Notes under the pieces: generated by a model
Told to the model about the DNA's origin: nothing
Database searches by the model: none
The model's input: the letters and a program-made list of their open reading frames with translations, nothing else
Made by a program: the position numbers and the translations under genes
Source of the DNA: Selaginella moellendorffii
Lineage: Eukaryota > Plantae > Lycopodiophyta
Assembly (NCBI RefSeq): GCF_000143415.4
Contig: NW_003314310.1
Location: forward strand, 347,904 to 411,903
Length of the DNA stretch: 64,000 nucleotides
Reading direction: 5' to 3'
Shown here: positions 616 through 39,399 of the stretch, piece after piece
How the letters are laid out: every line of letters begins with the position of its first letter
Numbering within the stretch: the stretch's first letter is position 1

Positions 616-961
616 ATGTGGTATTAGAGCAAAATGGCATGGGTTTGATTTCTATTGATTAGTGGCTACATAAAAATATATAATATATCTTTGAGTAAGG
701 TAAATTCCTACCTCTAAAATTTGAAATCGTATGTATTGAGCATCCATGTGTATGTCTTTCCTCTTGTGGAGCATCCGNNNNNNNNNNNNNNNNNNNNNNN
801 NNNNNNNNNNNNNNNNNNNNNNNNNNNNNNNNNNNNNNNNNNNNNNNNNNNNNNNNNNNNNNNNNNNNNNNNNNNNNAATAAAATAACTACTAAGGGTTC
901 TCTCATCAATCAATTACTCTATTTTCAGTTGGCTTAAAAGAGAGAAATAATGTGTGTTACA
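616..961 (+). mobile_element. TRIM family B copy (PBS, internal region, part of 3' LTR), spanning an assembly gap
   Basis: TGGTATTAGAGC (PBS-like) at 619-630. 616-777 is homologous to the reverse complement of 23425-23585. 878-961 matches the B LTR and ends TGTGTTACA. Confidence 0.75.
778..877. other. Assembly gap (100 N)
   Basis: Run of n. Confidence 1.
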
Positions 962-1836
962 TGGGACCAAATAGAACTAATACATGGGGCATGATAGCAA
1001 AGGTGTTTAATAGATACAATAAGTTATCATTTGACAAATATTGAGAGATCAAACTCAATATTACGGGGGTTTCCAACATTAACAAATTCAACTCAACAAA
1101 ATGATTTTTTCTAACCAAGTCAAGTATGTTTGACTAATAGCACTTAAGAATTCTGTCTTTATGCTCATTTGGTCAAGTGCACATGCGAAGATCAGTTTCT
1201 AAACTAACTTAGGTGAAGATTAAAAATTAGTTTAACAATACTAACCTCTTGTTGTTATAATAGTAAGGAAAGAATATTCAAAAACATTCGTCAACATGTA
1301 ACTTTAATATTCGCAATCACATTTATGACAGTTCCCCCCCCCCGTCCTCCTAGAGAAGATCAACATCCTCATTGATGCACACTCTATTCTAAACACCGTC
1401 AAGGAAACAACTCTAGAAAATATTTATGGTGTTCACACTTTATAAAAAATGCATCAACTTAAATGAGTTAGGCTAATCTCTCTATGTAACATAAATACAC
1501 TACAACTTAGACACATTTCGATTGTCAATGACAATAAAATGACTAATAGAGTCAACCACTATAGCGCACTTTATCTCTCTCCCCTTAAGCCAACTGGAAA
1601 AAGGGCATTTGCTTGATGAGAGAGCCCTTAGTGGCTATTTTATCCCCATTTATCCCCTAAGGTTCTAAGGATCCATGGTGACAGTATATTCATATTAGTC
1701 AACCACTGTAATACACCTTATCTCTCTCCCTTTAAACTAACTGGAAAAAGGGCATTTGCTTGATGAGAGCCCTTAGTGGCTATTTTATCCCCATTTATCC
1801 CCCAAGGTTCCAAGAATCCACAATGACAGTATATAT

Positions 1837-1858
1837 GCTCTATTTCGTTAAAGTGGGA
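1837..1858 (+). repeat. Left terminal inverted repeat
   Basis: Exact reverse complement of 23173-23194. Confidence 0.92.
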
Positions 1859-2959
1859 TTTATTCAGTAAAATGGGACTAGGTACAAATTTTCAAGTATT
1901 TGAAAATGACGTGAAATTATATGTTTTTTGTCCAGGGGCTAGACATATCTAGGGCATGGTGACTAGCGCGGTGACTTTATGTCCAGACTGAGTCCATCTG
2001 GTTGTATAATAAATCTCATTGTCAAGGTGAACAAGCTGAATCTGAAGCTAAAGAAGAGCGATGGCATGCGCGCACACACTATTTGTTTGTTCATTGAGCG
2101 TGTGGTGAGCTTTCCAAGATGAACGTCATTCTTATTAGCCAGACATATCACTTAATGGTGAGAACATTTAGATATTATTCAATGTTATCTTTTTCTAACG
2201 AATCTAATTGTGAAGGTGTAGCAAGAGGCATTGCTAGTCTGGAGAAGTCATTTAACTCATTTGACCCTTAGTGTATTTTCATGAAACTAAATAACATTCA
2301 TATTATTAAGGAATTTCTCTAGTACCTTTTTTTTACGACATAGAGGCTTGCATTTCTTTCAAAGGTGATTTAGTAAAAGGCCTGAGGGCACATGCCATTC
2401 TATTTCTCAGACTGGTATTAAGATATACTAGTGCAAAGGGAAAAAGGTATTTGGTGATCAAGTAAATGGCATGAAGGCACACGCCATTATAAGCCTAAGC
2501 GCTAGTGGACACCTCCTTTTTGGTACTCTCAGCGGTACTATCATCCTTCTCCGGGTCAGTTGTTTTGCTTTGGATTGTTGTCTCTGACGTTACTGGGGCG
2601 TTCTCAATAGTTGTTAATGTTGCCGTTTGTTCAGAAAAATGATCACCTGGAGTATAGTACGGGGAGTTTGGAAGACTTATATATTCTACATCTTCACCTA
2701 TCTCCTTCTCCGTCTCCTTTTCTGCCTCACTTACAGATTTTGTGCTTGCCATGAGAACGCTCTTCACCCTAAAATATGGAGTTCGTTGTGTTATAAAAGG
2801 AAACCAACACATACGCTGCAAGGGAATGATGGTACATAAAGCATGTAAGCCCACAATATGGGTTTATGTGCCATTAATATGGGCCACACGCCATATTATT
2901 AGATTTATGCATGTGTGATTGGTAAATGCATATGTCACATCATCTCAGGCCACATGCCA

Positions 2960-4743
2960 TCACGCCTCCTCTGATTCAGATTCGGATTGTTCACCTTGAA
3001 ATAAAATATATTAGAAACTTAGTAAAGGAATATTAATGAATCTCACCTTGAACCCGGGTTATGAATGCTCTTGCTGCATCTCTTGCATGGTCTGGCAAGG
3101 TGATGGTGGCACTCTGCTTCCGCATCCAACCATGCACAACATTATCCACCGATATGCTCATGCTGGGATCCCTTGGATTCAGCACCCATCTCTTTTCTAG
3201 GCAATCCTTCGTATATCCGGAACTTGGCTTGAACCACTCCACAGTTACATTGAAGGAGTTAGTTTCCGCGTCCTCCTCTGCATCAGTGATGCAGCGCCCC
3301 ACCCATATCATTTCTTTTTTATTACTGGGTCTGACAAGCACGACCATTCCTTTGCAGACCTGTACTGGATTGAATGCTGAATCCGGCCTCTTGTTCCTCG
3401 GCCCACAATAGTGATCCTCAACATCGTTATCTGTCACTGCATTTCCAGAGGACATTGTTCCGCTACTATCTGGTGCTCTGGGTTCTGGCCAAAAGGACTC
3501 TTCCAATTCTTCATATACAACCGGCCCATTTTGGATAGCAGATATAATCTTCTCCCAGTATTCGAGCAAAGGCTTGCACCTCTGAAAATAGGATTCTCCA
3601 CTAAACACCAACCCCCTCTTCCAGAAGGCAATATGCTGTCTAATCCCGGCCACTATACTTTCCTGGTCTTTGAGTCCATCCGGGTGCATCGGCCGTGGGG
3701 AACCCTGAGGAATCATAGGTTCCCCAGTTATGGGATCTCTCTTGAAGAGTTCAATGCCGTCCACTGGCAGCCACACTGTGTCCCATTCTCTCATCTTGTA
3801 CCTCATCACTGGAGCACCGTCACACATGCTGAAATGAAACTGAAGAGGCTTGGAGTGGCCAATCAGCGTTTCGGATCCGTCCCTGATGTAGCCTCTTACA
3901 AACCCCTTAAAGTCTGGAACCTCTGTCAGAAGTGCAGCTTCAACAGTGCCTTTGATGCAATTTTGGAATTCATCGTAGAGTTGTGGGAGGGTGAGGACAT
4001 TGGATCGCCGGAGGGACTCTGCCAGGTGACTGAACATGGCATCGATGTCTTCATGAGTGTGCCCAACCATGAGAAAGCCAAGTGTAACCGTTTCAAATAT
4101 GCCTTTGGCAACAAGCATCGCCAAGTACGCGAAGACGTACATGTTTTTGTTCTCACTGCCAGCATTGTCTGTTTGGAGCAGAAGATGGGGTGGAAGGCCA
4201 CATCAGCCGCAAGAACTTCCTTGAGATTCTGCTTCGTTTGGATGAGGCTATGCATTCACCGGGCGACCAGCCTCGTCGGAATGGCATGAGGCCTCACGTG
4301 ATAACCCTACAATCTGACGGCCAACATATTCACTGGGATGGCATGGGGCCCCATGCGATACTGCAAGCCTTTGCTCCTCCTCCAGCTGAACCCTGTATGG
4401 GGTTCGATCGACAAGGGCCTTATGCAAGGGTTGGCCGTTCAGCTCAGTCTGCGCACTTTGCAGAGACCTTAAGTGTTTTGCTAGGGACGCAATCATCATG
4501 TTTGCACCCCCGCCACCCCATAGAGGTACAAAGAAGTTCCCATAGTTCTGGGCACCATGCCCATGAGCGATTATGCCAAACAGAGACATAGGCAGCTGCA
4601 TGGATGAAGAGATTGCCTTGGGGGTAGGATTGAGTCGAGGTAAGCACGTCTTTTTCTGGTCCATTTTGTCGTGGATGATGCAGAGGTAAGAGTCAGGTCT
4701 CTCCATGGAGAGAATCCTGTTATGATAATATGCAGTCCTGCAG
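2960..4743 (-). pseudogene. Sola1-like (DUF7869-type) DDD transposase, C-terminal catalytic part
   Basis: One frame joins ORFs 4248-4706 and 3033-4142 through two C>T-type stops. Motifs: IIHDKMDQKKTCLP, LPPHLLLQTDNAGSENKN, FLMVGHTHEDIDAMFS. A probable last intron 2995-3046 gives the C-terminus GEQSESESEEA*. Confidence 0.85.
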
Positions 4744-5325
4744 TGTGAGACACAGAATCCTTAGGCCCCAAAGTGGAGCCGGAAGGGTGCCACGTGGTAG
4801 TGGCCGAAGCGAAAGCCAAACGAGTGTAACACGTTTGGGCCAAAAGCTCCGCCTTGAAAGGTCGAGAGCGGGAGTGGAACTCCTAATGAAGGGCTCGAGG
4901 AACGAGCACGAAGCGAGCAAAAGGCGAGGCTCCAAAAAGGGACCCAAAAGGACCAACACATGACACGTGGGAGTGTCCGAGATGGACTCGAGTTGGAGTC
5001 CGAAGTGGAGTCCGAGATGGACCCGAGTTGGAGTCCGAAGTGGAGTCCAAGATGGACCCGAGATGGAGTCCGAGATGGAGTCCGAAGTGGAGTCCGAGGT
5101 GGACCCGAGATGGACCCGAGTTGGAGTCCGAAGTGGAGTCCGAGATGGAGTCCGAGATGGAGTCCGAGGTGGACCCAAGATGGACCCGAAATGGAGTCCG
5201 AGATGGAGTCCGAGATGGAGTCCGAGATGGAGTCCGAGATGGACCCGAGATGGACCCGAGATGGAGTCCGAGATGGAGTCCGAGATGGAGTCCGAGATGG
5301 AGTCCGAAGTCGAGACCGAGACCGG

Positions 5326-5357
<32 letters not shown>

Positions 5358-6484
5358 TCGGGACCGAGACCGAGACCGAGGCCGAGGCCGAGACCGAGCC
5401 CGAGCCCGAGCCCGAGTCCGAATCCGAGTCCGAGTCCGAGTCCAAGTCCGAGTCCAAGTCCGAGTCCGAGTCCGAGTCCGAAGCCTGAGAGGGTGAAAGC
5501 CCAAAGCGTTCGTCTCCCAGACCCTGGGGGGTTTGGTGAGCTCCAAAAGTATAGTAGGGGGAGGACTGCAGTGGAGCCAGTTTGGCCAGGAAAGGCCAGT
5601 TTGGCCCAGGAAGGCCGGACCCAGTGTTGGGTGATGAGCTGCCCACTGGGAAGTCCAAGACTAGAGTGAATACGGACCGACAAGCGGGGTAGCTTGGTGA
5701 AGTGTTCAAGAGCCGGCTCTAGTTCCCCCGGGAGATCGACTGGCCGATGCTCCCAGTCCAAGTGTGGGTGGCACTACCTACTTGGATACCTGGTGTGGCT
5801 CAACGGAACCCGCTCTAAGCCCATGGCTAGAGCACCCAAGGGCAGAAGGCAAGGAGAGTACCCAGGTGGCTCACGTAAGGCCACGGTGTTCCGAAATGTT
5901 GTCCCAAAAGGCCCAGACTGTGGAAAGGAAGAGGAGCAGTCCTCTGGGGTAGTGACCAAGGACACAGTCGTGTGGTGAGGAAGTCCCAGAGGACCGTGGG
6001 ACTTAGTGGTCGGGCCTGTGGGTCTCGATCCAGTGGCAGTGTTGGCAAACACGGCCAGGGGCAGAAAGGAACTTAGTGGGGACTGACAGAGGGATATTGG
6101 GGAAGGCTATTCCCCTTGTCGGTGGGCATCCTAAGGATGCTAAGGAGTGGATCTGAGATGACCACTCACGGAAGGTTTGCCTAGTCTTGGAGAGCCAAGA
6201 CGGTGATGCAAGTGGTATTGGACTACCAGTGTGGCAAAGGTGATTGGGCATGGCCTTAGCGTAACAGGCTGCTATGTCGGTGGTACCTTTGAGTGTCGGT
6301 CACGGGATCGGACACGTGGAGCACTGGGACCAAGTGCAAATGTTGAGTGGCATGGATGCCATTCTCGGGGCTAGCAAGTCCCAAGTCCTAGATTGGACTT
6401 ATGGAGGTTGCGAATGAGACTCTTCCAAGTGGTTAGAGGTGTGGTTAAGTGACTAAAGTAGAATGGGAAATTTAGTCGCTTACA
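4744..6484 (+). repeat. 5' LTR, family A (contains GATGGAGTCCGA, GACCGA and GTCCGA tandem arrays, ~4975-5481)
   Basis: Direct repeat of 10581-12193; followed by PBS. Confidence 0.93.
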
Positions 6485-9400
6485 ATTTGGTATCGGAGCT
6501 GTTCCTTAGTCCGACTTTTATTGGTGCTCAAGTATATCACCATTGATATTGGCATCGGAAGGTCCGAGGAGTGGGCCTATCCTTGAGGAGTAGCAAGTCG
6601 GGAAGACATAGCTCTCCATTACAGTTCATGTGTGAACTTGTAGACGAGGTGGTGGATAGAAAAGGGCCAATAATGGAACGACTTTGGGATCTTGGGAACA
6701 ATGCAAGGTTTTCCTCATTGAGTTGAGGATGTGATCCGGATGAGCATTTGTCTCGGCAAATTGGCTAAGGTTGTTGTGGTAAACAACTAAAGTTGGGATC
6801 ACGGGAAAGATAGAGACTCCAAAACAATAAAGGAGTCACAAGATTATCCTCATATAGTTGAGGTTGGTGCTCATGAATGTGAGACCAGAGGTAATGACCG
6901 TGGGAGGTCAAATACGGAAGAGGACTCAAGTCCTTGAAATGGTAGCCGGGGCTACCTTTAATAAATGCTGGAAAACCCAAGGAGTTGGGGGGTGTACTTA
7001 GAGATGAGTGGTATTCTCATCGCATGGACAAGTAGTCCTAAGGGGCAAAAGTTGCCCCCAGAGAACAAAATCAAGTGTCGGAGTAACACTTGTGAAAATA
7101 GTCCTTTTGAGTAGGACAGGAATGCCAGAAGTGTATTCCAGTGAGGTAGTGCCTCACAAGTAGGACCTTAAGGGTCTATGGATTAACCAAGTCCAAAACT
7201 GCTGATGACTCAAGTAGAGTCAAGGGATGGTCCTAAAAGGACTGATGGAAGCATTTGGACTGAGGTGTGTTGTACCCCACAAAGGATGGGGGGGGATTAT
7301 AGGATCTAAGGATGAGAACAGAGGGTATCTCATCAATGGCAAAATGTGCCATGCTAAAGTTATGGGAAAGGTGTTCTCAGAAGAAAACAACTTTGACACA
7401 AAGTTGTGTGTGACCTCTATGGTGCAGTGCTAACGGATGGTTGGCATGAGAAAGAGCGGTGTTGGTTTTGGCAAAGATATAAACATGAAGGGGAAGTGTC
7501 ATAGAGGTAGGCTCGTGGAGCCGATGGTGTGGAGACACCAAATGTGCCAAGGTGTGATACCTTGAGGCTATGTTGGTGGGTTCATGAGAACCCCTTGCCA
7601 AAGGAATCCCAATGGAAATGGGAATGGCATAGCCTAAGCTGCAGAGCATGCAGTTGGAGTGTGGTGACCCAGATAATGATGGAGGTGTGAAAGCACCAAG
7701 CAATGAGTTGTGGGACTTGACAACTATGAGGCAACTAAGCAAGAGGTGCTAAATAACTGGTTGAACGGGTAGAAGGTAGCTACCCAAGACTTCTTAATAG
7801 CATAGGGAAGTCGGATACACCCTTACGGGGGATAAGTTGCTTGTGTTGCGATATAGTAAGTCAATGTCATAAAAGGAAATACTCATTGTCAAGAAAGCCA
7901 TCATTGGGACACCCGAACACTCTAGAACACCAGAAGGTGGTGTTTGATGTCGCGAGGGCAATGGATAAAGCCCAAGGGACTAAGTCCCTAGCGAATGATG
8001 GATAAAAGGTGCTATCCAAATGTCCAAGGTTGCGGAGACAGGAGAGGACTGTCTACCCGAGTTGGACAAAGCCAAGAATGGAATTTTGGCAAGGCTAGTG
8101 ATGGGCATGTAAAGGCCCATAAGCAACAATGTAATCCCAGTGTGTGGGATTATAAGGTGAGCATACCCGGATTGAGGAACCACTCCCTAGGCTATTGAGT
8201 AGGTTCATCCCTAAGAATACTTGCTAAAGCATGATAGAAAGTGCAAAGCTATCCTCCTGGTCTGGAGGAGAATGACCAAAGGAAAGGTTTGAAGCCAAAA
8301 AGCAAAAAGTAAGGGGATAGAACCGAACCGTAGGAATAAAAAGGCATAACCAAGGTTGGTTATGCCAGCTGGGAGTGGAGAATCAAGTGGGGGCTCGAGG
8401 GTGTTGCCGCTAGCAACCGTGATGCCATGGAGAGTCTAAAATATAGAATTGTCCATGTTAGACTATGTGGCAATTAGAAAGCTTGCAAAAAGGGAGGCCT
8501 TAGCAAGCTAAGGGACAGAGTTCCTTCAAGGTTCCCAAAGACGATTCTAGGTAGCTTAGTACCTAGAAAGGCCAAGTGTAAATGGTTCAAGGAACGCGCG
8601 AAATCAGAGTGGCGCAGCAGAAGCGTGGTCTTGAAGCTTGCCATGAGGCGAGGCTGTCAAGGTTAGGGAAGTAGTTCCCGAGTGTTCAAAGAGAGGGCTT
8701 TGAACGAAAGTCGATGACCAAGGACTTTCACGCTTATGCAGGAACCATGTTACAGTGGTCGGAGGACTTGCCAAGCGAGACTGGCAAGTCGGGGGAACAA
8801 ATACCCTAGTTGAAGGTGATAACTTCAAAAAGGGTGGGCCATGGGGCCAAGCATGGAGGAGTCCATGCATGATCACAGACTTGTCAAGTGAGAGGACTTG
8901 GCAGTGTGGAGGAACTAGGTTCCTAAGTTGTGATCTGTAGCGCGCTTTAAACATAAGTTGGTGCACCGGCGTGATGAGTCACGCCAGGCATCCTGGGTGA
9001 TGCCGTCCGTAGATGCATATACGGAGGTTGGGTTCGAGTCCCGACCCTCTAGTGCTTGGGTTCGAGTCCCAAATCACTAGGGCGTGGTGATGGTTTGGAA
9101 TATGAGGACACTCATATTTCGGTGGTCATGGACTCTCAGTGGGGAGACTGGTTTGGGCACACCGCCAAGCGAGGGATGCCTCGGAGTCGTGATGCACGGT
9201 TAGATTGCTTAGTGTGAAAGCTTAGCATATCTAACTTGAACGCTTTGGTGCAAGTGGCACCAAGGTCGTGGTGAGTGAGATGGGGACACCTAATCTCAAT
9301 TGTTATGAACCCTTGGCCGTAAAGGCTGGCTTGGGTGCACCGCCAAGTGTGGGGGATGCCCCCGGGGTTATAGTCAACAACTTGGAGGTCTAGAAGACCA

Positions 9401-10580
9401 AGTACCTATTGGCAACTCTGTTAAGGTGCCAAGGTGAAATCACTAGGTGATCTTATGGTCAGATAAGGATAAGGTCCTTGGTTGGCTAAGGAATGAAGTT
9501 CCTGGTTCAAAATGTTGAAATTGAACTGTTTAAGGTGGTGTGGCTTGGTCGTGATGACCAAGTGGGAAGAGCACCTAAGGGAAATAAACTATGTCCGTGC
9601 GATGGCATAGTGAGTCCGAGGAAAGTAGTCTCTATAAAAGACCCATGGGAGGGTCACAAAGTTGGGCCGTGGATAGAGCCCATAGCAGAAGATGCTAAAG
9701 AGACGTACTAGGGGTGAACACCCTCCGGACTTGGCAAAGAAGAGTCTTTGCTATGGAACCGAAACAATACCTCAAGAAGGGAGGTAGAGATTCGATGTTG
9801 CTTGGTGCAACAATCAACGGATAGGAGCAAAAGATGAGTGGCCAAGATAGGGCCGTGGAATCCCTTGGAAGGAATCCAAGTGACAAAGTTAGGCGAGGAA
9901 CACTAATGTGTTAGACGCTAACAAGTTGCGGGAAAGGAAGTGTGTTTCCAATGAGGGATTCCGAAATGCTCCGATTTGGCGATAGTGGAAGCTCCAAGGG
10001 AGGGAGCGGTAAGGTAGCCAAATGATAGGGCCATGAACAGCCCTAGCACAAAGTATGATAACTGAAACTTTGGCACGAAATAGAAGAGAGGATGATGGTG
10101 CCCTCGAGTAGAGAACTTCCTAGGATGGGAAGTGGAGTTGCACAAAAAGGTGCAAGGCAAGGTGTCGGAGACACCTAGGAAATTGACTCCAAGAAGTCAA
10201 AATTCAAAGTTCCAAAGTGCAAAGGTTATATCGATGGAAATCGAGACTACTCGAGAAGGAGTAGTGGGATTGACTTAGAGAAGGGTCTCTAAGAGATTTA
10301 GCGAGAACTAAACCAATAAAAGGAGAGAACCACTACATGTGGTCCAATCAGTCTCTAAGTTGGAGAGACTACCCTCCTTAGAGGATAGGCAAGGCATGGT
10401 GAGCCTTTGGTGTCAAACCATTGAGGAATATGGAGAAGGCATGGTGAGCCTTCAATGTCAAACCATTGACAAATATTGGCTAGGTGCCAAGGATGGAAAT
10501 GGTAACACATGCGAGTGTTACTTTACAAAATGGTTTACCGTTCGATGAGGACATTGAACTTCGTCTATGGATGGTGGAGT

Positions 10581-11034
10581 TGTGAGACATAGAATCCCTA
10601 GGCCCCAAAGTGGAGCCGGAAGGGTGCCACGTGGTAGTGGCCGAAGCAAAAGCCAAACGAGTGTAACACGTTTGGGCCAAAAGCTCTGCCTTGAAAGGTC
10701 GAGAGCGGGAGTGGAACTCCTAACGAAGGGCTCGAGGAACGAGCATGAAGCGAGCAAAAGGCGAGGCTCCAAAAAGGGACCCAAAAGGACCAACACATGA
10801 CACGTGGGAGTGTCCGAGATGGACTCGAGTTGGAGTCCGAAGTGGAGTCCGAGATGGACCTGAGTTGGAGTCCGAAGTGGAGTCCAAGATGGACCCGAGA
10901 TGGAGTCCGAGATGGAGTCCGTAGTGGAGTCCGAGGTGGACCCGAGATGGACCCGAGTTGGAGTCCGAAGTGGAGTCCGAGATGGAGTCCGAGATGGAGT
11001 CCGAGATGGAGTCCGAAGTCGAGACCGAGACTGG

Positions 11035-11066
<32 letters not shown>

Positions 11067-12193
11067 TCGGGACCGAGACCGAGACCGAGGCCGAGGCCGA
11101 GACCGAGCCCGAGCCCGAGTCCGAGTCCGAATCCGAATCCGAGTCCGAGTCCGAGTCCGAGTCCAAGTCCGAGTCCGAGTCCGAGTCCGAAGCCTGAGAG
11201 GGTGAAAGCCCAAAGCGTTCGTCTCCCAGACCCTGGGGGGTTTGGTGAGCTCCAAAAGTATAGTAGGGGGAGGACTGCAGTGGAGCCAGTTTGGCCAGGA
11301 AAGGCCAGTTTGGCCCAGGAAGGCCGGACCCAGTGTTGGGTGATGAGCTGCCCACTGGGAAGTCCAAGACTAGAGTGAATACGGACCGACAAGCGGGGTA
11401 GCTTGGTGAAGTGTTCAAGAGCCGGCTCTAGTTCCCCCGGGAGATCGACTGGCCGATGCTCCCAGTCCAAGTGTGGGTGGCACTACCTACTTGGATACCT
11501 GGTGTGGCTCAACGGAACCCGCTCTAAGCCCATGGCTAGAGCACCCAAGGGCAGAAGGCGAGGAGAGTACCCAGGTGGCTCGCGTAAGGCCACGGTGTTC
11601 CGAAATGTTGTCCCGAAAGGCCCAGACTGTGGAAAGGAAGAGGAGCAGTCCTCTGGGGTAGTGACCAAGGACACAGTCGTGTGGTGAGGAAGTCCCAGAG
11701 GACCGTGGGACTTAGTGGTCGGGCCTGTGGGTCTCGATCCAGTGGCAGTGTTGGCAAACACGGCCAGGGGCAGAAAGGAACTTAGTGGGGACTGACAGAG
11801 GGATATTGGGGAAGGCTATTCCCCTTGTCGGTGGGCATCCTAAGGATGCTAAGGAGTGGATCTGAGATGACCACTCACGGAAGGTTTGCCTAGTCTTGGA
11901 GAGCCAAGACGGTGATGTAAGTGGTATTGGACTACCAGTGTGGCAAAGGTGATTGGGCATGGCCTTAGCGTAACAGGCTGCTATGTCGGTGGTACCTTTG
12001 AGTGTCGGTCACGGGATCGGACACGTGGAGCATTGGGACCAAGTGCAAATGTTGAGTGGCATGGATGCCATTCTCGGGGCTAGCAAGTCCCAAGTCCTAG
12101 ATTGGACTTATGGAGGTTGCGAATGAGACTCTTCCAAGTGGTTAGAGGTGTGGTTAAGTGACTAAAGTAGAATGGAAAATTTAGTCGCTTACA
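10581..12193 (+). repeat. 3' LTR, family A
   Basis: Direct repeat of 4744-6484; preceded by PPT. Confidence 0.93.
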
Positions 12194-12198
12194 TGCAG

Positions 12199-16400: not shown

Positions 16401-17176
16401 AATATTTTGGGTCCAACATTTTTTGGGTTTCTTTGGTTCAAAATTGCATGAGCCCACACGCTATAATATTGATTTGAGAGAAAAATAGAAACAGATAGAA
16501 TTTCTTTATTTAGCTGAACATCTGCCATTTTTGGCAATACAAGATACTTTGAAATATCCAATCATGCATGGTATAAATATAGCGAGGGTATTAAATGATA
16601 TCCCAATCATGATCTTTCTTTTAGATTTTGCGTGCATGCAGTCCGAGGAATGATGACGTTGTGGATTTCTTTTGGATTTTGCGTGCTTGCATGCGCGCGG
16701 CAATCCAGAAATTAATGGTGGCACCCAAGTCCGAGGAATGATGACGTGGCGGGATTACCAACCGTTGTGACATTTCGCGCGTGTGAGGTTAGGTTTTGCA
16801 ATTTGCTTCGTACTCGCGCTCGCACACTCGCGCTCGCGCTCGCATCACACTCGCGCTCCCGCTCGCATCGCGCTCCCACTCGCGATCACGCTCACTTCTC
16901 TATAGGTTTCTCGTGTGCATCGGCGTCCACTCGCGCTCGCATCGCACTCGTATGCATCGGCGTCCACTTCAAGACACACCCAGTTTGTAACTTCGCCGCC
17001 AACTCCGCCGCCCACTCCGCCACCCACACGCAGCCCACTTGGCGTCCCGGGAGATTTCAGCGCCACTCTCCAACTGTAAGTGGCAGAGTAGCCTTGCTGC
17101 TACGATCCGCTGCACACACAGTGCACATTCGCCAGCGAGTCCGGCCTCGATTGTCACGGCCTCCATTCGGATTCAA

Positions 17177-20100
17177 ATGGTAAGTCTTTTAGGCCAAGTA
17201 GAAAATGGCATGAAGCCACAAGCCATTCAGTAGCAACATTGGCATGCACCGATTGGGCTCTCGAGTGCAGTCCGGTTGCAGATGGCGTGTAGCCTCACGC
17301 CATCTTAGGATGCAGCCTCAAGACATCTAATGCAGTGGTGAATGGCGTGTGGCCTCACGTTATTTCCAGCTGCTAGCTTTTCATCTATCAGCTCTAATTG
17401 TTGTGCATTTCTGAACAGGCGAGGAATTGCGTTCTTCTTCCAGCCACTGTCAATGTGGATGCAGAGAAGGGGGAGGAGCTCACCAATTGGACTTTCGGGA
17501 TGGAAGGCGAGGATCTGATGCTGTACAACACAGATGGTGGGAGAAAAGAATGCATGGGGATCCTCATCCAAGTGACAGACACTCCATGCAGTTCCATGCA
17601 AGAATATGGACTGGCACTTGTGGTAGAGACAGCGTCTGCCTTCAAGATCCACCTTGCACATCCTAGCGGCTTCCCGGAGGGGGGCAGCGGCTATGAGGAA
17701 TTCCTAGAGGGAGCTAGGGAGAGGTTGTCCAGGAGGCCCACAATTTCAAAGACGTTGCGGGTCTATGAAGATCACATGGAATCCACGGACCTCACCTACG
17801 GCGATGTTCAAAAACTATATTCCAACATTGAGCCGTTGAGAGTGCCTCCAGTTCGCGAAGCGAAGGGGAAGGGGGTCGATCTGGAAACTACCCCGAAGCA
17901 GAAAAGGGTGGTCAAGCTCAAGCCGACGTCCGACTCTGCTGCTCCAAAAAAGAAGCTACTCGGTGATGCCATTGCCTCGGGTTCGAACACTACACCCACC
18001 AAAAAGAAGAGCCGCAAAGAGCAGAAAGAGCAAGAAGAGGCAGCAAAAATCGTCGCAGATAATAGTACTTGTTACTATTCCAACAAAGTATATACAATCG
18101 ACGTGAGCCGTATCGACATCCAAAGCAAATACAACCACAGGCTAGTATCTGATGAGTGGTTGGAGAAACTGAAGCAGAAGATGCTGGCAAGTCCAGTAAC
18201 ACCTGACATCGCAGACGTGATCCCCTACTACCAAACAATGAAGGGCAAGACGAGGTTTCCAAACTTGATCAATAGGAAGGTGTTGGACGATCAGAACATC
18301 CGGTTCTATGCCGTCTCCGGGCAGCATTCTAGCTTGGCGATGCAAGAGATAGTTCTGGATATTATGGTGGGCGAGGAGGTGAAGAAAGTCTTCAAGACAA
18401 GAGTTGTCCGCCTGATAAAAGGCAACTCGCCCCTCCGATCTATCATATCCATCTCCCACGCGCAGAATGTCAAGCAAGAAACGTGCTACAAATCGGGTCT
18501 GCACGAGACATTGGCACGAACACGGAAGCTCTGGGTTCAACTGAAGAAACCACAAAAACCAGGACAAGGACGTGCACTAGCAACTAGCGCCTGGCAGGTA
18601 AGCCTTGTTGCATGTGGCATAGCATGTGGCCTCACGCCATTTCCATTGCAGGAATTCTCGAGTCTTCTCTCGAAAACACTGGGGGTCAATGACACACTCA
18701 GCATCCATAACATTCTACTCGCGACAAAAGTTGTTTTTGACAAATGGGTAGATGTGTTGAGGAGGTACCATGACGGGGAGTTGCTAAACTCAATGGGTGT
18801 GGAGGACGGCCGGAAGCCCAATGATTTGAAGCTCAACGCCTTGCGTTTCTCGCGGTCTCTAGACGACGACGACCTTCTGACAGTGGCTAATGCTCTTCTA
18901 CGTGGTGAGGTAGTCTTCAACAAGACCAAAATGACTCCCGGCCATATTGTGACATACGAGGACTTGTGCACAACTCTGAGAGCTCGTGCGCTATTGAAGG
19001 ATTGGATCTTCAAGCAAGTGGCCGTGGAGAGGGTGAGCATCGACACCACGCAAGAGATGATGGAAGAGCTGGACTTGTCAAATGAAGACATCGACGAGTA
19101 CGTGAAGGGGGCCCCCAAGTTCATCGATCTGCTGCGGGATGCCACGAAAAGTAAAGCTGAGAAGTTGGATCAGTATCCAAATTTCATTAAGAGGGATGTC
19201 GACCACCGGCTTCAGAAACAGCTCGACCCCGCAACAGAGGCCTATCGAGAACCTTACCGGGTATACGTGAATTCGGATGAGGATCAAAGGTGGAGGAGCA
19301 TCGTTTCCCGCGGAGATGAGCAGGTCAAGAACATCTTTTGTGTGATGGACTTCACAAACGAAGAGATCACTCATGCAGACGAAGTCAGCTCCATCATTGA
19401 CTTAATGGTGGGACTTGCGGAGGTGGAATCCTCAGTCCACTATATGATCTACGACTCCGAATCCTATCACAAGTTCTGGAAGGCCTTGAACGAGGTGAAG
19501 GTTCGGTTGAAAAGCAAGGAGATGCGGGAGATCCATGGGATAATGGCTAAGAAGAAGATACCGACGAATGTCCGCATCTTCACACTCACCCTTGTTATTG
19601 GTCCTGCAGCAGAGTGGGACTGGAGTGACTTCCCAGCTTTGTTCGACAAGGCCGATCGAATTGATCTGAGGGAGGTCAATTTACCCGTGCATGAGGAACT
19701 GAAGACGGCTATGGAGCTTTCGAATCCAAAGAAAGCTCCAGGTGCAGCATGGGAAATGCTCAGCTGGGTCTTCAACGCAATAGCGGGTGACACCAAGGGC
19801 AAATGCGTTGTCGAGTACAACTGCGGCGGACTATTCTTTCGAGCCGCACTACTCAAGGGTGTCCCGTGTGTTGTGGTGACAAACTCCATTGAAGAGGTGA
19901 CTTCAATGGAGCATATAATTACAGTTGCCAAAGAAAAACAGTATCTTCTCTGCGAACCTGGTGAGTACGCACTTTAAGTTTAAATGTTATCTCACAAGCT
20001 CTGTATGCAGGAGTGTGGCCACCCCCAGATGCTGAAATGGCGTTAACAGCTACTGATGTTAGGCCGAGCTCACAACCTGCACAAGGTAAGGTCACGTGAG

Positions 20101-21013
20101 GCCTCACGCCATTTTGATTATAGATCGTTGTGAATATTCAGACACGAGGACTGAAAAGCGCACTGGTGGCGCGTCGAAGAAGGACAAACAGACAAGCAAT
20201 AGGAAAAAAAGAGGTACAAATTATATTTGCAATGGCGTGTGGTCTCATGCCATTCCTTGCAGGAGACACTTCTTCAAAGGCAAAACAGGCAAGCACCAGC
20301 CAAGCTCAAACTGACAGTGGTCATAAAAAGCGAAAGCACGTTGGACAGTCGTCGGGATCAGAGGCGTTTGATTCGAAAAGGAAGAAGGGCAACGAAAAGA
20401 TGATAGGTAATGCCTCACAGTTATGGCGTGTGTGCTCATGCCATTCATTGCAGATCAAGGGCTGAGTGAAAGGAGCCAGTCACCACCTCCTGACTCAGAT
20501 TCCTATGGCAGACTCCCCTTCCCCAATCTCAATGGAGAGGTACAATGGATGAGGGATGCTTTTCAAGTCAGGGCCACGTTTTTCTCATCTCATCGTCTTC
20601 AAAGGGTGCAAGAACGTGTAGAAACCATGTTAAGACAGTTGGGTGAGGATACGGTCCTAGGTCAAGCACTGAAACAGGCTATGGATGTCTTGTATTTTGA
20701 GATGGAGACTCGGCCAGATGATTTTCCCAAGATGGTCCTGGAAAAACAAGCCATCCAGCCTGAGCAGCCTATGGAAGAAATGCAAGAGGGGGATGAGGAG
20801 CCAGAGAAAGATAATGAGCAGGAAGAGCAGAAGGACGAAGAGGAGGACAAAGAAGAGGAGGACGAAGAAGAGGAGGACGAAGAGGACTTGGATGGTCCTC
20901 ACAATGGTGACGATCACAATAACGACGATGACGATGATGACGACGATGGCCAGCCTGAGGTGGCCAAAGAGCAGCAGAGGAAGGTCATACAAGACAAACC
21001 ATCAGCTAAATAA
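17177..21013 (+). CDS. Transposon cargo gene 1: large spliced protein with a ParB/Srx-like region, a degenerate N4/N6 DNA-methyltransferase-like region and an acidic tail
   Basis: Exons (GT-AG, phase-consistent): 17177-17179, 17419-18597, 18652-19960, 20011-20085, 20142-20213, 20263-~20406, ~20453-21013; 859-aa open frame. Motifs NHRLVSDEWLEKLKQKM..FYAVSGQHSSLA (ParB-like) and GKCVVEYNCGGLFFRAALLKGVPCVVV (MTase motif-I-like). Domain calls are by eye. Confidence 0.7.
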
Positions 21014-21235
21014 TAGTACATCCATTCCTAACCTTTTACCATTTCTAACATTGTCCATGTAGGTCGCAGAAGAAATGGTAAGTAGAGATTATTCAGTTGA
21101 ATTAAGATACAAACTCTAGCCTTTAGTGTCGAGGAAGGATAGTGCCAAGCAAGGGTCGAAACGTATGTCCAATCCTTCAGAATCAGCAGTGCGCCCAATA
21201 GCAGTTGATGGTAAATACAGTATAGTTGATTCAAT

Positions 21236-22754
21236 GTGCTAATGAGTTTGTTTTTAGTAGCCAGTAGGGAGGATACCATCTCAATCGAAGGGAGATATTT
21301 GGACATGCATATGGATCCGCCAGTGGACTCTACTTGCCTGCAAGAGTCATCAGAGCTGGTGGAGGCTACTATCCATATCAACGCCAAGCAAGCTGACCAC
21401 GCTCCACTTGATGCTGCCCATACCACTGAGTCAATCTTGTCCACGTATCCAACTGACGGTGACCAGGCGCCATTGGACCCGCATGAGGCCGCCCCAACCG
21501 CCAAGCCGGTCGTATCCTCATTTCCAACGGACTCAACGTGTGCCCAATCGTCTGACTACGCGTCGTTGGAACCTCCCTACACCGCCCTTGCTGCCTGTTC
21601 GGTCATGTCCACTTTGCCAACGGAGGCACCAGCTGAAATGGCGTGTGATCACACGCCATCGGAACCACCCCATGCCACTGTTGAGCCAGTTGTACCAGAG
21701 TCTACAGCTGAAATGGCATGTGCCCACACGCCATCGGATGCGATTGACCCCACATTGCAGAGGAGAGTATTTCCGCCCTTCACGTTTCCTCGACCAAAAC
21801 CCTCTGAACGACCATTGGGAGCACCATTCGCTAATATTGTAGATGGTAAATTGACTTGTACCATTTTTTATGCTGACGCATTTCATTTCAGAGTCACGGC
21901 GAAAGTACTGTATCGTTTTTGATCTGAACGGTGTCCTTTTCTCCCATGAGTGTGGCTCGTCCTCGAATGTCACTGCACCCTCCAAAGCCTGCGGTCGCAA
22001 GTTGGTCAAAAGAGACAGATTCACATTAATCACACGGGAGAAACTGCGGGATCTAATAATGACCATGCGACACTTAATGCAGAGGGCCGGGTTCAATTTG
22101 CAATTGGGAGTTTGGACATCCATGATGTGCCACAATGCATTAACGTTGCTACAGATGATGCACGATCAGACGCGAGTAATATTACCATTTGACTTTCTCC
22201 TAACGCAGGAGGATTGCTTGACTATGGTCCATGTGAGGGGTAGCAAGCCCATCTTCGTTAAGCCAGAGGCTGTAGTGATGAACCGGACTGCTAGGTCAAG
22301 TGAAATCCTCATCATCGATGACTCGCCGATTAAAACTGCAACGAACACGCACACATATGCAGTGCACCCCATCTCTTGCAGTATGGAAACTAGGGAGAAG
22401 AAACCGTATGTTCTGGGGGACCTTGCAAAACGGCTTGAAGCGATGGTGATAGAGAACCGGCCAGTCCAGGAGGTGGCTGCAGAAATCAACCAAATGGCAG
22501 ATGGAACGGTATATCAGAAGCCATTTGATCGGACAGACACCAGTCATCATTTATGCCATGTATATTGTCTAGCCAAGCACTATCCGCATCTCCATAATCT
22601 GCTCAACTGGATGGGTTCTTCGACCACTGAACATGAGCGTGGACGTATTAGAGAAGAGATGGCATTACTATTGGGTTTAAATCCTGATAGTGTGGAGAGT
22701 GATGAAATTCCAAGATTATTGTATAGGCGTTGGAGGCAAAAAATAACAGTCTGA
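21236..22754 (+). CDS. Transposon cargo gene 2: FCP1/NIF-like HAD phosphatase domain after a Pro/Thr/Ala-rich linker (start uncertain)
   Basis: ORFs 21236-21922 and 21870-22754 join through intron 21846-21891. Motifs CIVFDLNGVL, LGVWTSMM, LLTQEDC, KPIFVK, ILIIDDSPIK are typical of the NIF/FCP1-homology family. Confidence 0.75.
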
Positions 22755-23172
22755 GATGGCATGTATTTATTTAAAAATGTAACTTATTATGGCATGGGGT
22801 TCCATGCCATTGTATTAATATTAAAAGACAATTCTTTGAGAGGATTTGCATTATACTAGAAGTGTTACAGCATGTTATTGGAAGTCTACGAAGTTGTTTT
22901 ATTAATAAGGGGAAAGTAAAGATTGAATGGGGACTTGGGCACCACCTAGACTCGGAGCAACTAAGTCAATATTAAAAGGATGGAAAGAAATTGGACGACG
23001 ATGACAAGGAGAAGAGAGAGGTGAAGCAGTGGCAGGGGGAGGAGAAGTGATTGAGTAGACATTTCCTTGTTTAAAATAAAATGGCATGTGCCTCAATGCA
23101 GTTGAATTTTGTTATATTTATATACTATATAAAGGTTTGGAAACCTTATTTTACAAGTGGGATAATGACAAT

Positions 23173-23194
23173 TCCCACTTTAACGAAATAGAGC
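23173..23194 (-). repeat. Right terminal inverted repeat
   Basis: TCCCACTTTAACGAAATAGAGC, exact reverse complement of 1837-1858. Confidence 0.92.
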
Positions 23195-25077
23195 TTATAT
23201 TCAAATCTCATCCCATGATCACATGCGTTACACTCACCCCCCCTTCAAAGATGTCAATGTCCTCATTGACTATTGACTAACAACCCTTACTGAGCCAAGG
23301 GGAACTAGCACCTCCATTTCCGCACTCAATCTACCAATCCTTCCATTATGTAGATTAGCTATTCCATGTGAGGCAACTAATTATCCACCCGTACCGTAGT
23401 CCCATGGTGGATACCTTTGTCTATGGATACTCCACACAAAAGGAATGACGTACGCATGGATATCCAATACATACGATTTCAAATTTAAGAGTAGGAATAT
23501 ACCTTGCTCAAGGGTATATTATATTTTTAAGTAGCCACTAATCAATGGGAATCGAACCCGTGCTATTTGCTCTGATACCACATATAGCACACTTTATCTT
23601 TCTCCCCTTAAACCAACTGAAAAAGGGGTAATTGATGAGAGAGTCTTTAGTGGCTATTTTATCCCCATTTATCCCCTAAAGTTCCAAGGATCCACGGTGA
23701 CAGTATATCTAAATCTCATTCCATGATCACATGCTTTACAACCACCCTTGCTACTTTGGGTGTCACCCAGTTTATAAAAAATGATATACTCTTAACCATA
23801 GATGATATAGAGAGAGAAGCTACTCTATATCCTAAACAAATAAACTAAACCTATCAATAAGGTTTAAATAGATTACTATAAACAGATAATTAGAGTTGTT
23901 TATTTGGTCATAACTTTTTAATAGGATAAGAAAAATGAAGAGAGAGGTGGGTGATGTGACAAATCTATAGTAGTTACCCCATAATTAAAGATTTTATCAT
24001 ACACATGAAGTGTTGAAGCCAATTTCCCTTTACTAACCCAAACCCAAAGATCAAGGGATGGATAATCAAAGACAATGATATCTTAGATACCAAATTATCA
24101 ATAAATAAATCTTAGATTATAATAGAAAAGTATTACAAATAAGTTATCATCCAATAAACTAGTATTAAAAAAACCACCAAGATTATTAAAGGTTAAAATC
24201 ATAAGATTCACTATCTAATAAAATTCAATAGCAAGTATACTATCAAGAAAACTCAATGATAAAACTTAATTACCAAAGATTGTAGATAGCATGCTAAATA
24301 ACTTACATAAAATAACTCAAAGTATCATTGACAGGTAAGTAAAATGCTCTCAAATGTATCACCTAAAGAAAATAGCATCTAATCTATCAAAACCAACTAT
24401 AGTAACAATTAATAAAGAATGAATGCAACAAGACTAACAAACACTCATACATGTCAACTATTATACCACCCAATCTAAATGGATCCTAATCAATAATACT
24501 AATGAATTAAATTTGCTTAAAAAAGTGTCAATAACACCTTACCAATATCTCAAACCTAAAAGATCAAACCAAAGCAAATTACAAAGAATATGTGGTAATA
24601 AGAAAATAACTATCTATCATGAAAGCTCATTAATCATCCCATTAATAAAGAGATATATAATCATCATTAAATAAATAATCCACAATCTCGAATAATGGCA
24701 AATCATTTTATATCAACAACAATCAAGTAAAACCTTGACAAAAATAATCAACTATTTTAAATGATAATCAATCATCACCAATAATTGTTAAATGTTATAC
24801 TAACTTCAGCATTGAAGCTAATGAGCGAAAATTCTTTCCCCAACAACTCCTAAAACATGAATTAATGAGCATAAAATTTAAAGAACCAAAAGCTCGAAAA
24901 AGCCTATAATTAAGTCTCACTTAATAATGATCATGAGTTTCATATGAACTAATGTTAATGCCAAAGAAGAAATTCTGGTACAACCCACAATATCCTCTTC
25001 AATACATCCATAAGCTAAACATCATAATACAAGAGTTAATGAAGAGTATGTTTGCATCAATCCAAAAGCCAAGCAAA

Positions 25078-39362: not shown

Positions 39363-39399
<37 letters not shown>

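What the first reader, a model, noticed from the sequence alone, without database searches (positions are those of the whole stretch)
1835..23196. Giant Sola1-like DNA transposon carrying a ParB-like/MTase-like gene and an FCP1-like phosphatase
Seen: 22-bp perfect TIRs 21.4 kb apart, an ATAT duplication whose removal restores the TRIM LTR, a transposase on the minus strand and two spliced cargo genes on the plus strand, separated by a ~3.7-kb divergent spacer. Established: DN..ENKN / GH..D catalytic motifs and 4-bp AWWT TSDs are features of Sola1-type transposons. Inference: cargo gene 1 shares the element-specific palindrome in its introns, and cargo gene 2 has copies in its exon, so both look like integral parts of a ~14-kb multi-gene element rather than recent captures. 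I know of no description of this gene combination in a plant DNA transposon.
Basis: partly seen in the sequence, partly recalled or inferred. Interest (0 to 1): 0.92.

Follow-up and report, generated by a model that had tools for sequence, protein, structure and literature searches.

The report
Sola1 transposon with ParB-like accessory genes
This is a real but disabled 21-kb cut-and-paste transposon of a non-seed plant that carries, besides its transposase, a ParB-like DNA-binding gene, a phosphatase-like gene and 22 copies of its own palindrome; the design was reported in algae in 2025, so it is a land-plant variant of a known kind.

Summary
Perfect 22-bp inverted ends (1837-1858 / 23173-23194) are unique in the window. 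A 4-bp ATAT duplication flanks them, and removing 1835-23196 plus one ATAT restores the interrupted repeat. The minus-strand transposase shares its catalytic motifs with the published Ectocarpus Sola1-1 transposase. In this copy it is split by a nested 7.45-kb LTR retroelement with its own 5-bp duplication; without that insert the element is 13.9 kb.

The plus strand carries two spliced genes. The first encodes about 1,100 aa: a ParB fold (Z 9.9), a weakly supported methyltransferase-like domain lacking the catalytic motif, then basic and acidic tails. The second is NIF/FCP1-like, with DLNG in place of DxDxT.

A 22-bp palindrome occurs 22 times, only inside the host element (chance 0.05).

A 16.8-kb element in the liverwort Riccia sorocarpa has the same three-gene layout, its own different palindrome (34 copies) and a palindrome-bearing intron at the same position. 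The cargo is therefore integral, not a recent capture.

A Sola1 element with a ParB-methyltransferase gene was published for Ectocarpus in 2025. This scan has also noted the family several times on other DNA of this genome. Expression could not be tested. Verdict: a new variant of a known kind.

The parts
1831..1834 (.). Left copy of the 4-bp target-site duplication ATAT
   Evidence: removing 1835-23196 plus one ATAT restores the interrupted repeat without a gap at the junction.
1835..1858 (+). Left terminal inverted repeat. The 22 bp at 1837-1858 are perfect; the 24 bp including the two outer bases have one mismatch. Subterminal AAARTGGGA motifs lie at 1850 and 1869.
3033..4743 (-). Transposase, 3' part. 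It holds the catalytic core with the HDKMDQ, DNAGSENKN and GHTHEDID motifs. In-frame stops lie at 4250-4248 and 4205-4203 in the variable linker. Two palindromes lie at 4281 and 4338.
   Evidence: Pfam DUF7869 scores 7.5e-40. Homologues P0019-P0029 align in one frame from 4742 to about 3081.
4744..12193 (+). Nested LTR retroelement with LTRs at 4744-6484 and 10581-12193, TG..CA ends and few internal ORFs. Its 5-bp duplication TGCAG lies at 4739-4743 and 12194-12198. It splits a transposase exon.
   Evidence: The LTRs are 97.9% identical over 1383 bp. Removing the insert plus one duplication restores one ORF. Homologue P0024 is contiguous across the junction. Few ORFs inside.
12199..13268 (-). 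Transposase, 5' part: the N-terminal ORF 12396-13268 with a Cys-rich block, plus 12199-12365 with a C..C..H block.
   Evidence: tblastn matches to the Riccia L004 and L007/L008 transposases are.
13269..17176 (.). Divergent spacer between the transposase and cargo gene 1. It holds 8 palindromes and internal 78-nt and 98-nt repeats.
17177..21013 (+). Cargo gene 1. The frame is open from 17398. Proposed introns are 18598-18651, 19961-20010, 20086-20123, 20214-20262 and 20407-20453, and the stop is at 21011-21013. A possible start codon (ATG followed by GTAAGT) is at 17177. The model has about 1,100 codons.
   Evidence: Splice sites are read. The joined frame is open over 1125 codons with no stop (a local check only). 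Homologue alignments break at the first intron.
18085..18948 (+). ParB-like N-terminal domain (18085-18483) followed by a helical, probably HTH DNA-binding region. The conserved motif is ISGQHS, not the ParB GERRxRA.
   Evidence: VIA-align: PadC Z 9.9, KorB Z 9.3, pNOB8 ParB Z 8.5 over residues 1-288, sulfiredoxin Z 7.5. Foldseek finds Noc/ParB/KorB at probability 1.0 and E about 5e-3. The motif is conserved in Riccia and L005.
19252..19960 (+). Methyltransferase-like region. Only the D remains where DPPY would be (reads DFTN). A motif-I-like block reads YNCGG.
   Evidence: Whole-model search: CcrM Z 6.6, M.RsrI Z 6.5, MboIIA Z 6.4, PvuII Z 5.7, in a low-confidence part of the model. Alignment A2. 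No Pfam hit and no PDB sequence hit. The domain-only model has pLDDT 48 and gives only generic matches.
21075..22754 (+). Cargo gene 2 (NIF/FCP1-like). Its exon runs to 21845, the intron is 21846-21891, and the last exon is 21892-22754. The NIF domain is at about 21906-22352. Motif I reads DLNG and motif IV reads IIDDSP. Palindromes at 21638 and 21713 are read in frame.
   Evidence: Pfam NIF scores 25.5 bits against a cut-off of 21.8. The splice keeps the frame open. DLNG is conserved in the Adiantum protein P0017 and in L005.
2061..22810 (.). 22 copies of the private palindrome ATGGCRTG-N6-CAYGCCAT (up to 2 mismatches). Starts: 2061, 2377, 2466, 4281, 4338, 13502, 13572, 13670, 14357, 16070, 16149, 16308, 16443, 17205, 17282, 17342, 18619, 20232, 20423, 21638, 21713, 22789.
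   Evidence: 22 matches against 0.05 expected. All lie in the host element, none in the nested LTR element, none outside.
23173..23196 (-). Right terminal inverted repeat
23197..23200 (.). Right copy of the target-site duplication ATAT

Best explanation
This is one copy of a Sola1-superfamily cut-and-paste DNA transposon, 13.9 kb before an LTR retroelement landed in it. The family's standard equipment is three genes: a transposase on one strand and, divergently on the other, a roughly 1,100-aa ParB-like protein and a NIF/FCP1-like protein.

Shown here: the ends, the target duplication, the gene order, the folds and motifs, the private palindrome array, and the same design in a liverwort. This copy cannot make transposase, because an LTR element splits the coding exon and there is a probable nonsense codon. 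It could move only if another copy supplied the enzyme.

Inferred mechanism: the transposase recognises the terminal and subterminal AAARTGGGA-type motifs. The dimeric ParB-like/HTH protein recognises the family-specific palindromes scattered over the whole element. That would mark or compact the element's own DNA. Two uses are conceivable: bringing distant ends together, or, through the inactive methyltransferase-like and NIF-like modules, influencing the element's chromatin or its transcription by RNA polymerase II.

My odds: about 0.9 that this is a Sola1-family element with integral accessory genes; about 0.4 that the ParB-like protein is what binds the palindromes; under 0.2 for any specific downstream effect.
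For: Single insertion event: unique perfect 22-bp inverted ends, an ATAT duplication, and gapless restoration of the target repeat.

Sola1: AWWT targets are described as a Sola1 hallmark (PMC3845634). The catalytic core shares the DN..ENKN and MVGHTH..ID blocks and the intervening residues with the published Sola1-1_Ec32 transposase. Pfam DUF7869 scores 7.5e-40.

Nested LTR: 97.9% identical LTRs, a TGCAG duplication, and a restored ORF.

ParB fold: Z 9.9, 9.3 and 8.5.

NIF: Pfam score above its cut-off.

Palindromes: 22 in the element, none elsewhere, 0.05 expected, and absent from the inverted ends.

Independent replicate: Riccia sorocarpa locus L004 has 33/36 inverted ends at about 317 and 17126. 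It has the same gene order and 34 copies of a different palindrome confined to 954-15568. An intron at the homologous position carries that palindrome.

Other relatives: the fern Adiantum encodes a protein joining the middle and methyltransferase-like region to NIF. Contig L005 has the ParB-like, methyltransferase-like and NIF ORFs in a row.

Another copy: P0018 is a 97.6% identical transposase fragment in public data.
Against: No other copy from this genome could be fetched, so the family's ends and target preference rest on one copy here plus one in Riccia.

The methyltransferase-like assignment is weak. There is no sequence hit, the model confidence is low, and the domain-only model gives only generic Rossmann matches.

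The ParB CTP-binding arginine motif is replaced by ISGQHS, and the NIF catalytic DxDxT by DLNG. Neither the ParB clamp activity nor phosphatase activity can be assumed.

Nothing here discriminates between the ParB-like protein and the transposase as the palindrome binder, because both proteins and the palindrome differ between the two families compared.

The Sola1 assignment rests on motif comparison by eye with one published sequence, not on a tree against Repbase.
Confidence: 0.8

Rival explanations
1. The palindromes are internal binding sites of the transposase itself, like the subterminal repeats of En/Spm-type elements. The ParB-like protein would then do something unrelated to them.
For: The palindrome, the transposase and the ParB-like protein all differ between the window's family and the Riccia family, so covariation cannot assign the binder. 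Palindromes also cluster near both ends, at 2061-2466 and 22789.
Against: The inverted ends and the subterminal AAARTGGGA motifs, where a transposase must bind, do not contain the palindrome. Palindromic sites suit a dimeric HTH protein, and the cargo protein has the ParB N-domain plus helical fold of parS-binding proteins. In red algae, inverted-repeat arrays lie next to ParB-domain accessory genes of an unrelated superfamily, Plavaka.
Confidence: 0.2
2. The palindromes are a small self-propagating insertion, foldback or introner-like, that spread inside the element. In coding regions they survive because they are spliced out as mini-introns or read in frame. They would have no function for the element.
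For: Several copies sit in 47-54-nt introns just before the 3' splice site, with a similar tail (CCATTC..TTGCAG). Two are read in frame within a 75-bp duplicated unit. Some sit inside longer 78-nt repeats.
Against: There are none in the nested LTR element and none in the other 42 kb of the window, so they do not behave as a genome-wide mobile unit. Riccia has a different palindrome with the same element-wide distribution and in the homologous intron, which points to long-term retention.
Confidence: 0.1
3. The plus-strand genes are host genes captured between the ends, as in Pack-type elements, and are not part of the family's design.
For: A distant homologue in Selaginella (P0001, locus L002) lies among ordinary host genes with no transposase within 10 kb.
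Against: The same gene order lies inside inverted ends in a liverwort, at 21-31% protein identity. The private palindrome is shared by cargo introns, exons and the transposase region. The cargo protein has only 17 weak relatives among 1.84 billion representatives, so it is not a widespread host gene.
Confidence: 0.04

Closest known systems
Sola1-1_Ec32 of the brown alga Ectocarpus (Genome Biol 2025, PMC12477816)
   Same: Both are giant Sola1 elements: 21.5 kb there, 21.4 kb here with the nested insert, each with a 4-bp duplication. The transposase shares the same motif blocks. On the opposite strand each has one large gene, 1104 aa there and about 1,100 codons here, starting with a ParB-like domain followed by an N4C/N6A methyltransferase-type domain.
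   Different: Here the host is a land plant. The ends are 24 bp rather than 282 bp. The methyltransferase-like domain has lost DPPY and has no sequence-level hit. There is a further NIF/FCP1-like gene and an element-wide private palindrome array, neither of which is mentioned for Ectocarpus in the passages I read.
Plavaka accessory gene PAG3 of the red alga Bostrychia (bioRxiv 10.1101/2025.02.11.637652; Curr Biol 2025)
   Same: Both have a ParB-like N-terminal domain in a transposon accessory protein, with arrays of inverted repeats in the element. The authors propose that the protein binds its own transposon.
   Different: The superfamily differs (Plavaka/KDZ). The partner domain there is a 2OG oxygenase. 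The repeats are described as tandem arrays next to the gene, not spread through introns, exons and both ends.
Bacterial and plasmid ParB/KorB/Noc with parS-type palindromes
   Same: The N-terminal ParB fold is followed by a helical DNA-binding region, and there are multiple copies of a 16-22-bp palindrome on the replicon that encodes it.
   Different: The CTP-binding GERRxRA motif is replaced by ISGQHS. There is no ParA partner. The setting is eukaryotic and the gene is spliced. Binding has not been tested.
Physcomitrella Sola1 (Repbase Sola1-1_PPa; Bao et al. 2009, as cited in PMC9033089)
   Same: A Sola1 element in a non-seed land plant. It is the best Repbase match of the Ectocarpus transposase that this one resembles.
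   Different: I could not obtain its sequence or structure, so I do not know whether it carries accessory genes.

Membership tests
Sola1 superfamily of DNA transposons | 4-bp target-site duplication with AWWT preference | tested here: met
   ATAT lies at 1831-1834 and 23197-23200, and the empty site is restored. The hallmark is stated in PMC3845634. This rests on one copy only. The Riccia element's flanks are compatible with ATAT but ambiguous because they lie in a TA run.
Sola1 superfamily of DNA transposons | Transposase catalytic core homologous to Sola1 transposases | tested here: met
   The blocks HDKMDQ, DNAGSENKN and MVGHTHEDID, and the residues between them, match the published Sola1-1_Ec32 transposase, which its authors classified by best BLASTP hit to Repbase Sola1-1_PPa. 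The comparison was by eye. Pfam DUF7869 scores 7.5e-40.
Sola1 superfamily of DNA transposons | Placement inside the Sola1 clade, not Sola2 or Sola3, in a transposase tree | not testable with these tools
   Repbase reference proteins are not available here.
Sola1 superfamily of DNA transposons | Terminal inverted repeats bounding the element | tested here: met
   22/22 perfect, or 23/24 with the outer bases, and unique in the window.
ParB/Srx superfamily (ParB N-terminal domain) | ParB N-terminal domain fold | tested here: met
   Model residues 1-133 (pLDDT mostly 75-94): PadC Z 9.9 (rmsd 2.8, 95 aligned), KorB Z 9.3, sulfiredoxin Z 7.5.
ParB/Srx superfamily (ParB N-terminal domain) | Adjacent HTH DNA-binding domain as in chromosomal and plasmid ParB | tested here: inconclusive
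   pNOB8 ParB-N gives Z 8.5 over residues 1-288 at rmsd 5.1. Foldseek finds Noc/ParB/KorB at probability 1.0 but E about 5e-3.
ParB/Srx superfamily (ParB N-terminal domain) | CTP-binding arginine motif GERRxRA | tested here: not met
   The motif reads ISGQHS in this element, in Riccia and in L005.
Beta-class N6A/N4C DNA methyltransferases (Pfam N6_N4_Mtase) | Sequence match to the family | tested here: not met
   No Pfam hit. A profile of six relatives finds no PDB sequence at E up to 10.
Beta-class N6A/N4C DNA methyltransferases (Pfam N6_N4_Mtase) | Fold similarity | tested here: inconclusive
   CcrM Z 6.6, M.RsrI Z 6.5, MboIIA Z 6.4, PvuII Z 5.7, rotifer N4CMT Z 5.4, on a region with pLDDT 30-65. 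The domain-only model (pLDDT 48) gives only generic Rossmann methyltransferases at Z up to 6.9.
Beta-class N6A/N4C DNA methyltransferases (Pfam N6_N4_Mtase) | Catalytic motif IV (D/S)PP(Y/F) | tested here: not met
   Only the D is invariant. The slot reads DFTN here and LDTTS, LDAAH, ADLRR, LDATT and CDSAN in five relatives.
FCP1/SCP (NIF) HAD-type phosphatases | NIF domain by Pfam | tested here: met
   PF03031 scores 25.5 bits against a cut-off of 21.8, E 1.2e-5. The Adiantum relative P0017 scores 5.8e-17.
FCP1/SCP (NIF) HAD-type phosphatases | Catalytic motif I DxDx(T/V) | tested here: not met
   The motif reads DLNGV here and DLNG in Adiantum and L005. The second Asp is Asn in all three. 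The DD of motif IV is kept (IIDDSP).
Giant algal transposons with ParB-domain accessory genes (Ectocarpus Sola1-1, Bostrychia Plavaka) | Accessory gene with an N-terminal ParB-like domain, inside the element, beside the transposase | tested here: met
   and the gene order in this window.

The most novel reading that the evidence does not exclude
The ParB-like/dead-methyltransferase protein, the NIF-like protein and the family-specific palindromes may together form a self-recognition system of giant DNA transposons, conserved from brown algae to land plants. In this reading the element paints its own 14 kb with a sequence-specific protein. The purpose would be either to fold the element so that distant ends can pair, or to steer RNA polymerase II and chromatin on the element. 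Placing the sites in mini-introns, conserved in position between a liverwort and this plant, would be how sites are kept inside coding sequence.
Probability: 0.25. Interest if true: 0.8.

Novelty: new variant of a known kind. Interest (0 to 1): 0.5.

Why it matters
Transposons that carry their own DNA-binding and chromatin-type accessory genes were reported in brown, red and green algae in 2025 and earlier. No function has been tested. This window, with the Riccia, Adiantum and Selaginella relatives found here, shows that a Sola1 lineage with such a module exists in liverworts, ferns and lycophyte-type genomes.

Three points go beyond the papers I could search. The methyltransferase and phosphatase motifs are lost in a conserved way, not randomly. 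Each family has its own palindrome spread over the whole element. The palindromes sit in a positionally conserved intron.

The result is a defined protein and a defined 22-bp site that can be tested for binding directly.

Tried and rejected
- Word-indexed protein search with the 859-aa ORF: nothing. The exhaustive HMMER search gave only 17 weak hits.
- Exact look-up of six ORFs of the window in the protein collection: none present. P0018, the 97.6% identical fragment, has no contig on record, so no second copy from the same family could be fetched.
- Contexts of transposase homologues: P0032 (no DNA), and L007 and L008, which have too little sequence on the relevant side. These were uninformative about cargo.
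- PDB sequence-profile search with the methyltransferase-like alignment: no hit.
- Domain-only AlphaFold model: too poor to use.
- Nucleotide comparison of the window with all fetched loci: no match, so the host species was not identified. Other notes of the scan call this genome Selaginella moellendorffii; I did not verify that.
- Bao et al. 2009 could not be read.
- A search for papers linking ParB accessory genes to land-plant transposons found none.
Exons were searched by reference only. Joining was done only in a local script to check that the frame stays open.

Full report
**Observation**

The 22-bp sequence at 1837-1858 recurs as its exact reverse complement at 23173-23194. It occurs nowhere else in the 64-kb window, even with three mismatches. 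With the two outer bases the ends are 24 bp with one mismatch.

The element sits in a short repeat that has an uninterrupted paralogue at 23573-23790. The interrupted copy reads ...GACAGTATAT, then the element, then ATAT-TCAAATCTCAT. The paralogue reads ...GACAGTATAT-CTAAATCTCAT. Removing 1835-23196 and one ATAT gives a junction that aligns without a gap. It scores best of four alternative reconstructions, 106 against 100-104, which is a modest margin. So this was one insertion event with a 4-bp ATAT duplication. I did not check that the target repeat is a TRIM LTR.

**A nested retroelement explains the size**

Two direct repeats at 4744-6484 and 10581-12193 are 97.9% identical over 1383 bp. 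They begin TG, end CA, and are flanked by TGCAG on both sides. Deleting this 7,450-bp LTR element and one TGCAG fuses two minus-strand reading frames into one. A homologous transposase (P0024) aligns residues 6-64 to 12374-12195 and residues 64-576 to 4742-3225, so it is contiguous across the junction. The transposase of this copy is broken.

Two in-frame stops also lie in the variable linker, at 4250-4248 and 4205-4203. The first could lie in a mini-intron. The second has no AG between it and the conserved LP..LLLQ.DN block, so it is probably a true nonsense codon.

**Transposase family**

The minus-strand frame carries HDKMDQ, DNAGSENKN and MVGHTHEDID. Pfam gives DUF7869 at 7.5e-40.

The supplement of the Ectocarpus transposon paper prints the transposase of Sola1-1_Ec32, which its authors classified by best BLASTP hit to Repbase Sola1-1_PPa. 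Its core reads DNTVAENKN, then about 25 residues, then MVGHTHIQID. It also shares many intervening residues and has the same upstream C..C, H and MDxxxQ blocks. AWWT targets are called a hallmark of Sola1 in PMC3845634, citing Bao et al. 2009. I accept Sola1 membership on these two criteria. A tree against Repbase could not be made.

Homologues at 30-46% identity are common in environmental assemblies, and more distant ones occur in Heterosigma and Mytilus. One fragment, P0018, is 97.6% identical with six substitutions in 253 residues. At least one other near-identical copy therefore exists in public data.

**Cargo gene 1**

The long frame 17398-19977 does not end the gene. Canonical GT..AG mini-introns lie at 18598-18651 (54 nt), 19961-20010 (50), 20086-20123 (38), 20214-20262 (49) and 20407-20453 (47). 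Removing them keeps one frame open for 1125 codons to the stop at 21011-21013. The 38-nt intron is very short and may be mis-set.

Two results support the first intron independently. Alignments of relatives break exactly there. The AlphaFold model is disordered exactly over the residues it would encode.

The model of 18085-19974 has a confident N-terminal half. Residues 1-133 match ParB-family N-domains: PadC Z 9.9, KorB Z 9.3, sulfiredoxin Z 7.5. pNOB8 ParB matches over residues 1-288 at Z 8.5. Foldseek lists Noc, ParB and KorB at probability 1.0 but E about 5e-3. The ParB arginine motif is replaced by ISGQHS, which is conserved in Riccia and in contig L005.

The C-terminal 240 residues are poorly modelled. 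They match beta-class amino-methyltransferases at Z 5.4-6.6. There is no Pfam hit and no PDB sequence hit, and the domain-only model is unusable. In an alignment of six relatives, only the D is conserved where DPPY would be. A motif-I-like block (YNCGG, YSGGY, YGCGG, followed by a hydrophobic strand) is kept. 'Methyltransferase-like and catalytically dead' is a fair reading, but it is weakly supported.

**Cargo gene 2**

The frame 21236-21845 joins 21892-22754 across a 46-nt GT..AG intron, giving ...ANIVD-ESRRKYCIVFDLNG.... Pfam NIF is above its cut-off. Motif I reads DLNG instead of DxDxT. The same DLNG is found in the Adiantum protein P0017 and in L005, while the DD of motif IV is kept. This is a conserved departure from the catalytic motif, so phosphatase activity should not be assumed. 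The palindromes at 21638 and 21713 are read in frame in the first exon.

Both cargo genes have an ATG followed directly by GTAAGT upstream, at 17177 and 21075. That hints at two separate genes with similar 5' structure. However, annotators fused the methyltransferase-like and NIF parts in Adiantum and in Riccia. Whether there is one transcript or two remains open.

**Palindromes**

ATGGCRTG-N6-CAYGCCAT with up to two mismatches occurs 22 times, against 0.05 expected. All copies lie in the host element, at 2061-4359 and 13502-22810. None lies in the 7.45-kb nested element and none in the 42.6 kb outside. They come in clusters of two or three, 57-135 bp apart. They are absent from the inverted ends, which carry AAARTGGGA-type motifs instead. 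In gene 1 they sit just before the 3' splice site of mini-introns.

**Relatives elsewhere**

The exhaustive search found only 17 weak relatives of the cargo protein among 1.84 billion representatives. Their contexts are informative.

Locus L004 is from Riccia sorocarpa; the accession is identified in PMC11923412. It has 33/36 inverted ends at about 317 and 17126. It carries a Sola1-type transposase on the minus strand (6365 to 3726), a ParB-like gene on the plus strand (10001-12284), then a 702-aa NIF gene (12533-16372). It has 34 copies of a different palindrome, TCGGGAYGCRTCCCGA, all between 954 and 15568.

Its intron at the position homologous to our first intron (11681-11846) carries two or three of those palindromes.

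The Riccia end resembles our subterminal ATTCAGTAAAATGGGA.

The fern Adiantum nelumboides encodes a 701-aa protein joining the middle and methyltransferase-like part to NIF. Contig L005 has the three ORFs in a row. A Selaginella homologue, P0001, lies among host genes without a transposase nearby.

They do not meet it within this genome.

**What is known**

PMC12477816 describes the 21.5-kb Ectocarpus Sola1-1 with an opposite-strand 1104-aa ParB + N4C/N6A methyltransferase gene. [quoted passage not shown]

The Bostrychia paper describes a ParB-domain accessory protein with inverted-repeat arrays in Plavaka elements. It proposes that the protein binds its own transposon.

I found no paper placing such genes in land-plant transposons, and none mentioning a NIF-type partner. 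That search covers open-access text only.

This scan has noted the same family on other DNA of this genome (s1-394622, s1-337352, s1-419143 and others). Those are unchecked notes. I tested one of their claims, that liverwort relatives have the same layout with a different palindrome, and it holds.

**Mechanism**

Shown: structure, gene order, folds, motifs, the site distribution and its conservation. Everything that follows is inferred.

The ParB-like/HTH protein would bind the palindromes as a dimer. The reasons are that the ends use other motifs, palindromes suit a dimeric HTH protein, and each family has its own site. The transposase as binder is not excluded.

What binding would achieve is unknown. 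The two ideas I find most plausible are compaction of a long element so that its ends can pair, and control of the element's chromatin or transcription through the two inactive-looking enzyme-like modules.

**Limits**

There are no reads, so the splice models are supported only by sequence logic and homology. No second copy from this genome was available. The host species was not identified here.

**Verdict**

The finding is a land-plant variant of a kind published for algae in 2025. This copy is dead. Interest is moderate.

Noticed in passing
window 18598-18651, 20214-20262, 20407-20453, about 17180-17231; L004 11681-11846: Mini-introns of 47-54 nt each hold one 22-bp palindrome directly before the 3' splice site, with a shared tail (CCATTC..TTGCAG). 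The homologous intron in the Riccia element holds Riccia's own palindrome.
   Followed up: partly
window 4744-12193; also 1-618 (-) and 38380-40121 (-): An LTR retroelement family with 1.6-1.7-kb LTRs that contain a 12-bp-period tandem array of different length in the two LTRs (4965-5590, 10802-11300). The 4.1-kb internal region has almost no ORFs, so the element is probably non-autonomous.
   Followed up: partly
L002 10001-11425 (Selaginella moellendorffii GL377575.1): A 451-aa homologue of the middle and methyltransferase-like part of cargo gene 1, without the ParB N-domain. It lies between ArfGap and VQ host genes with no transposase within 10 kb. It is either a remnant or a domesticated copy.
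   Followed up: no
window 17177-17185 and 21075-21083: Both cargo genes are preceded by ATG followed immediately by GTAAGT, as if the first exon ended with the start codon.
   Followed up: no
window 14343-14420, 16135-16212, 16429-16506; 15016-15113 and 15900-15997: The spacer contains 78-nt repeats, each carrying a variant, imperfect palindrome (ATTGCATGAGCCCACACGCTAT). It also contains a 98-nt repeat pair that is 99% identical.
   Followed up: no
window 1859-1877 versus L004 317-352: The Riccia element's inverted end resembles the subterminal ATTCAGTAAAATGGGA next to this element's left end (about 16 of 19 bases). This may be a conserved transposase-binding motif.
   Followed up: no
window 778-887: A run of N (an assembly gap) lies inside an inverted copy of the repeat that the transposon interrupted.
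   Followed up: no
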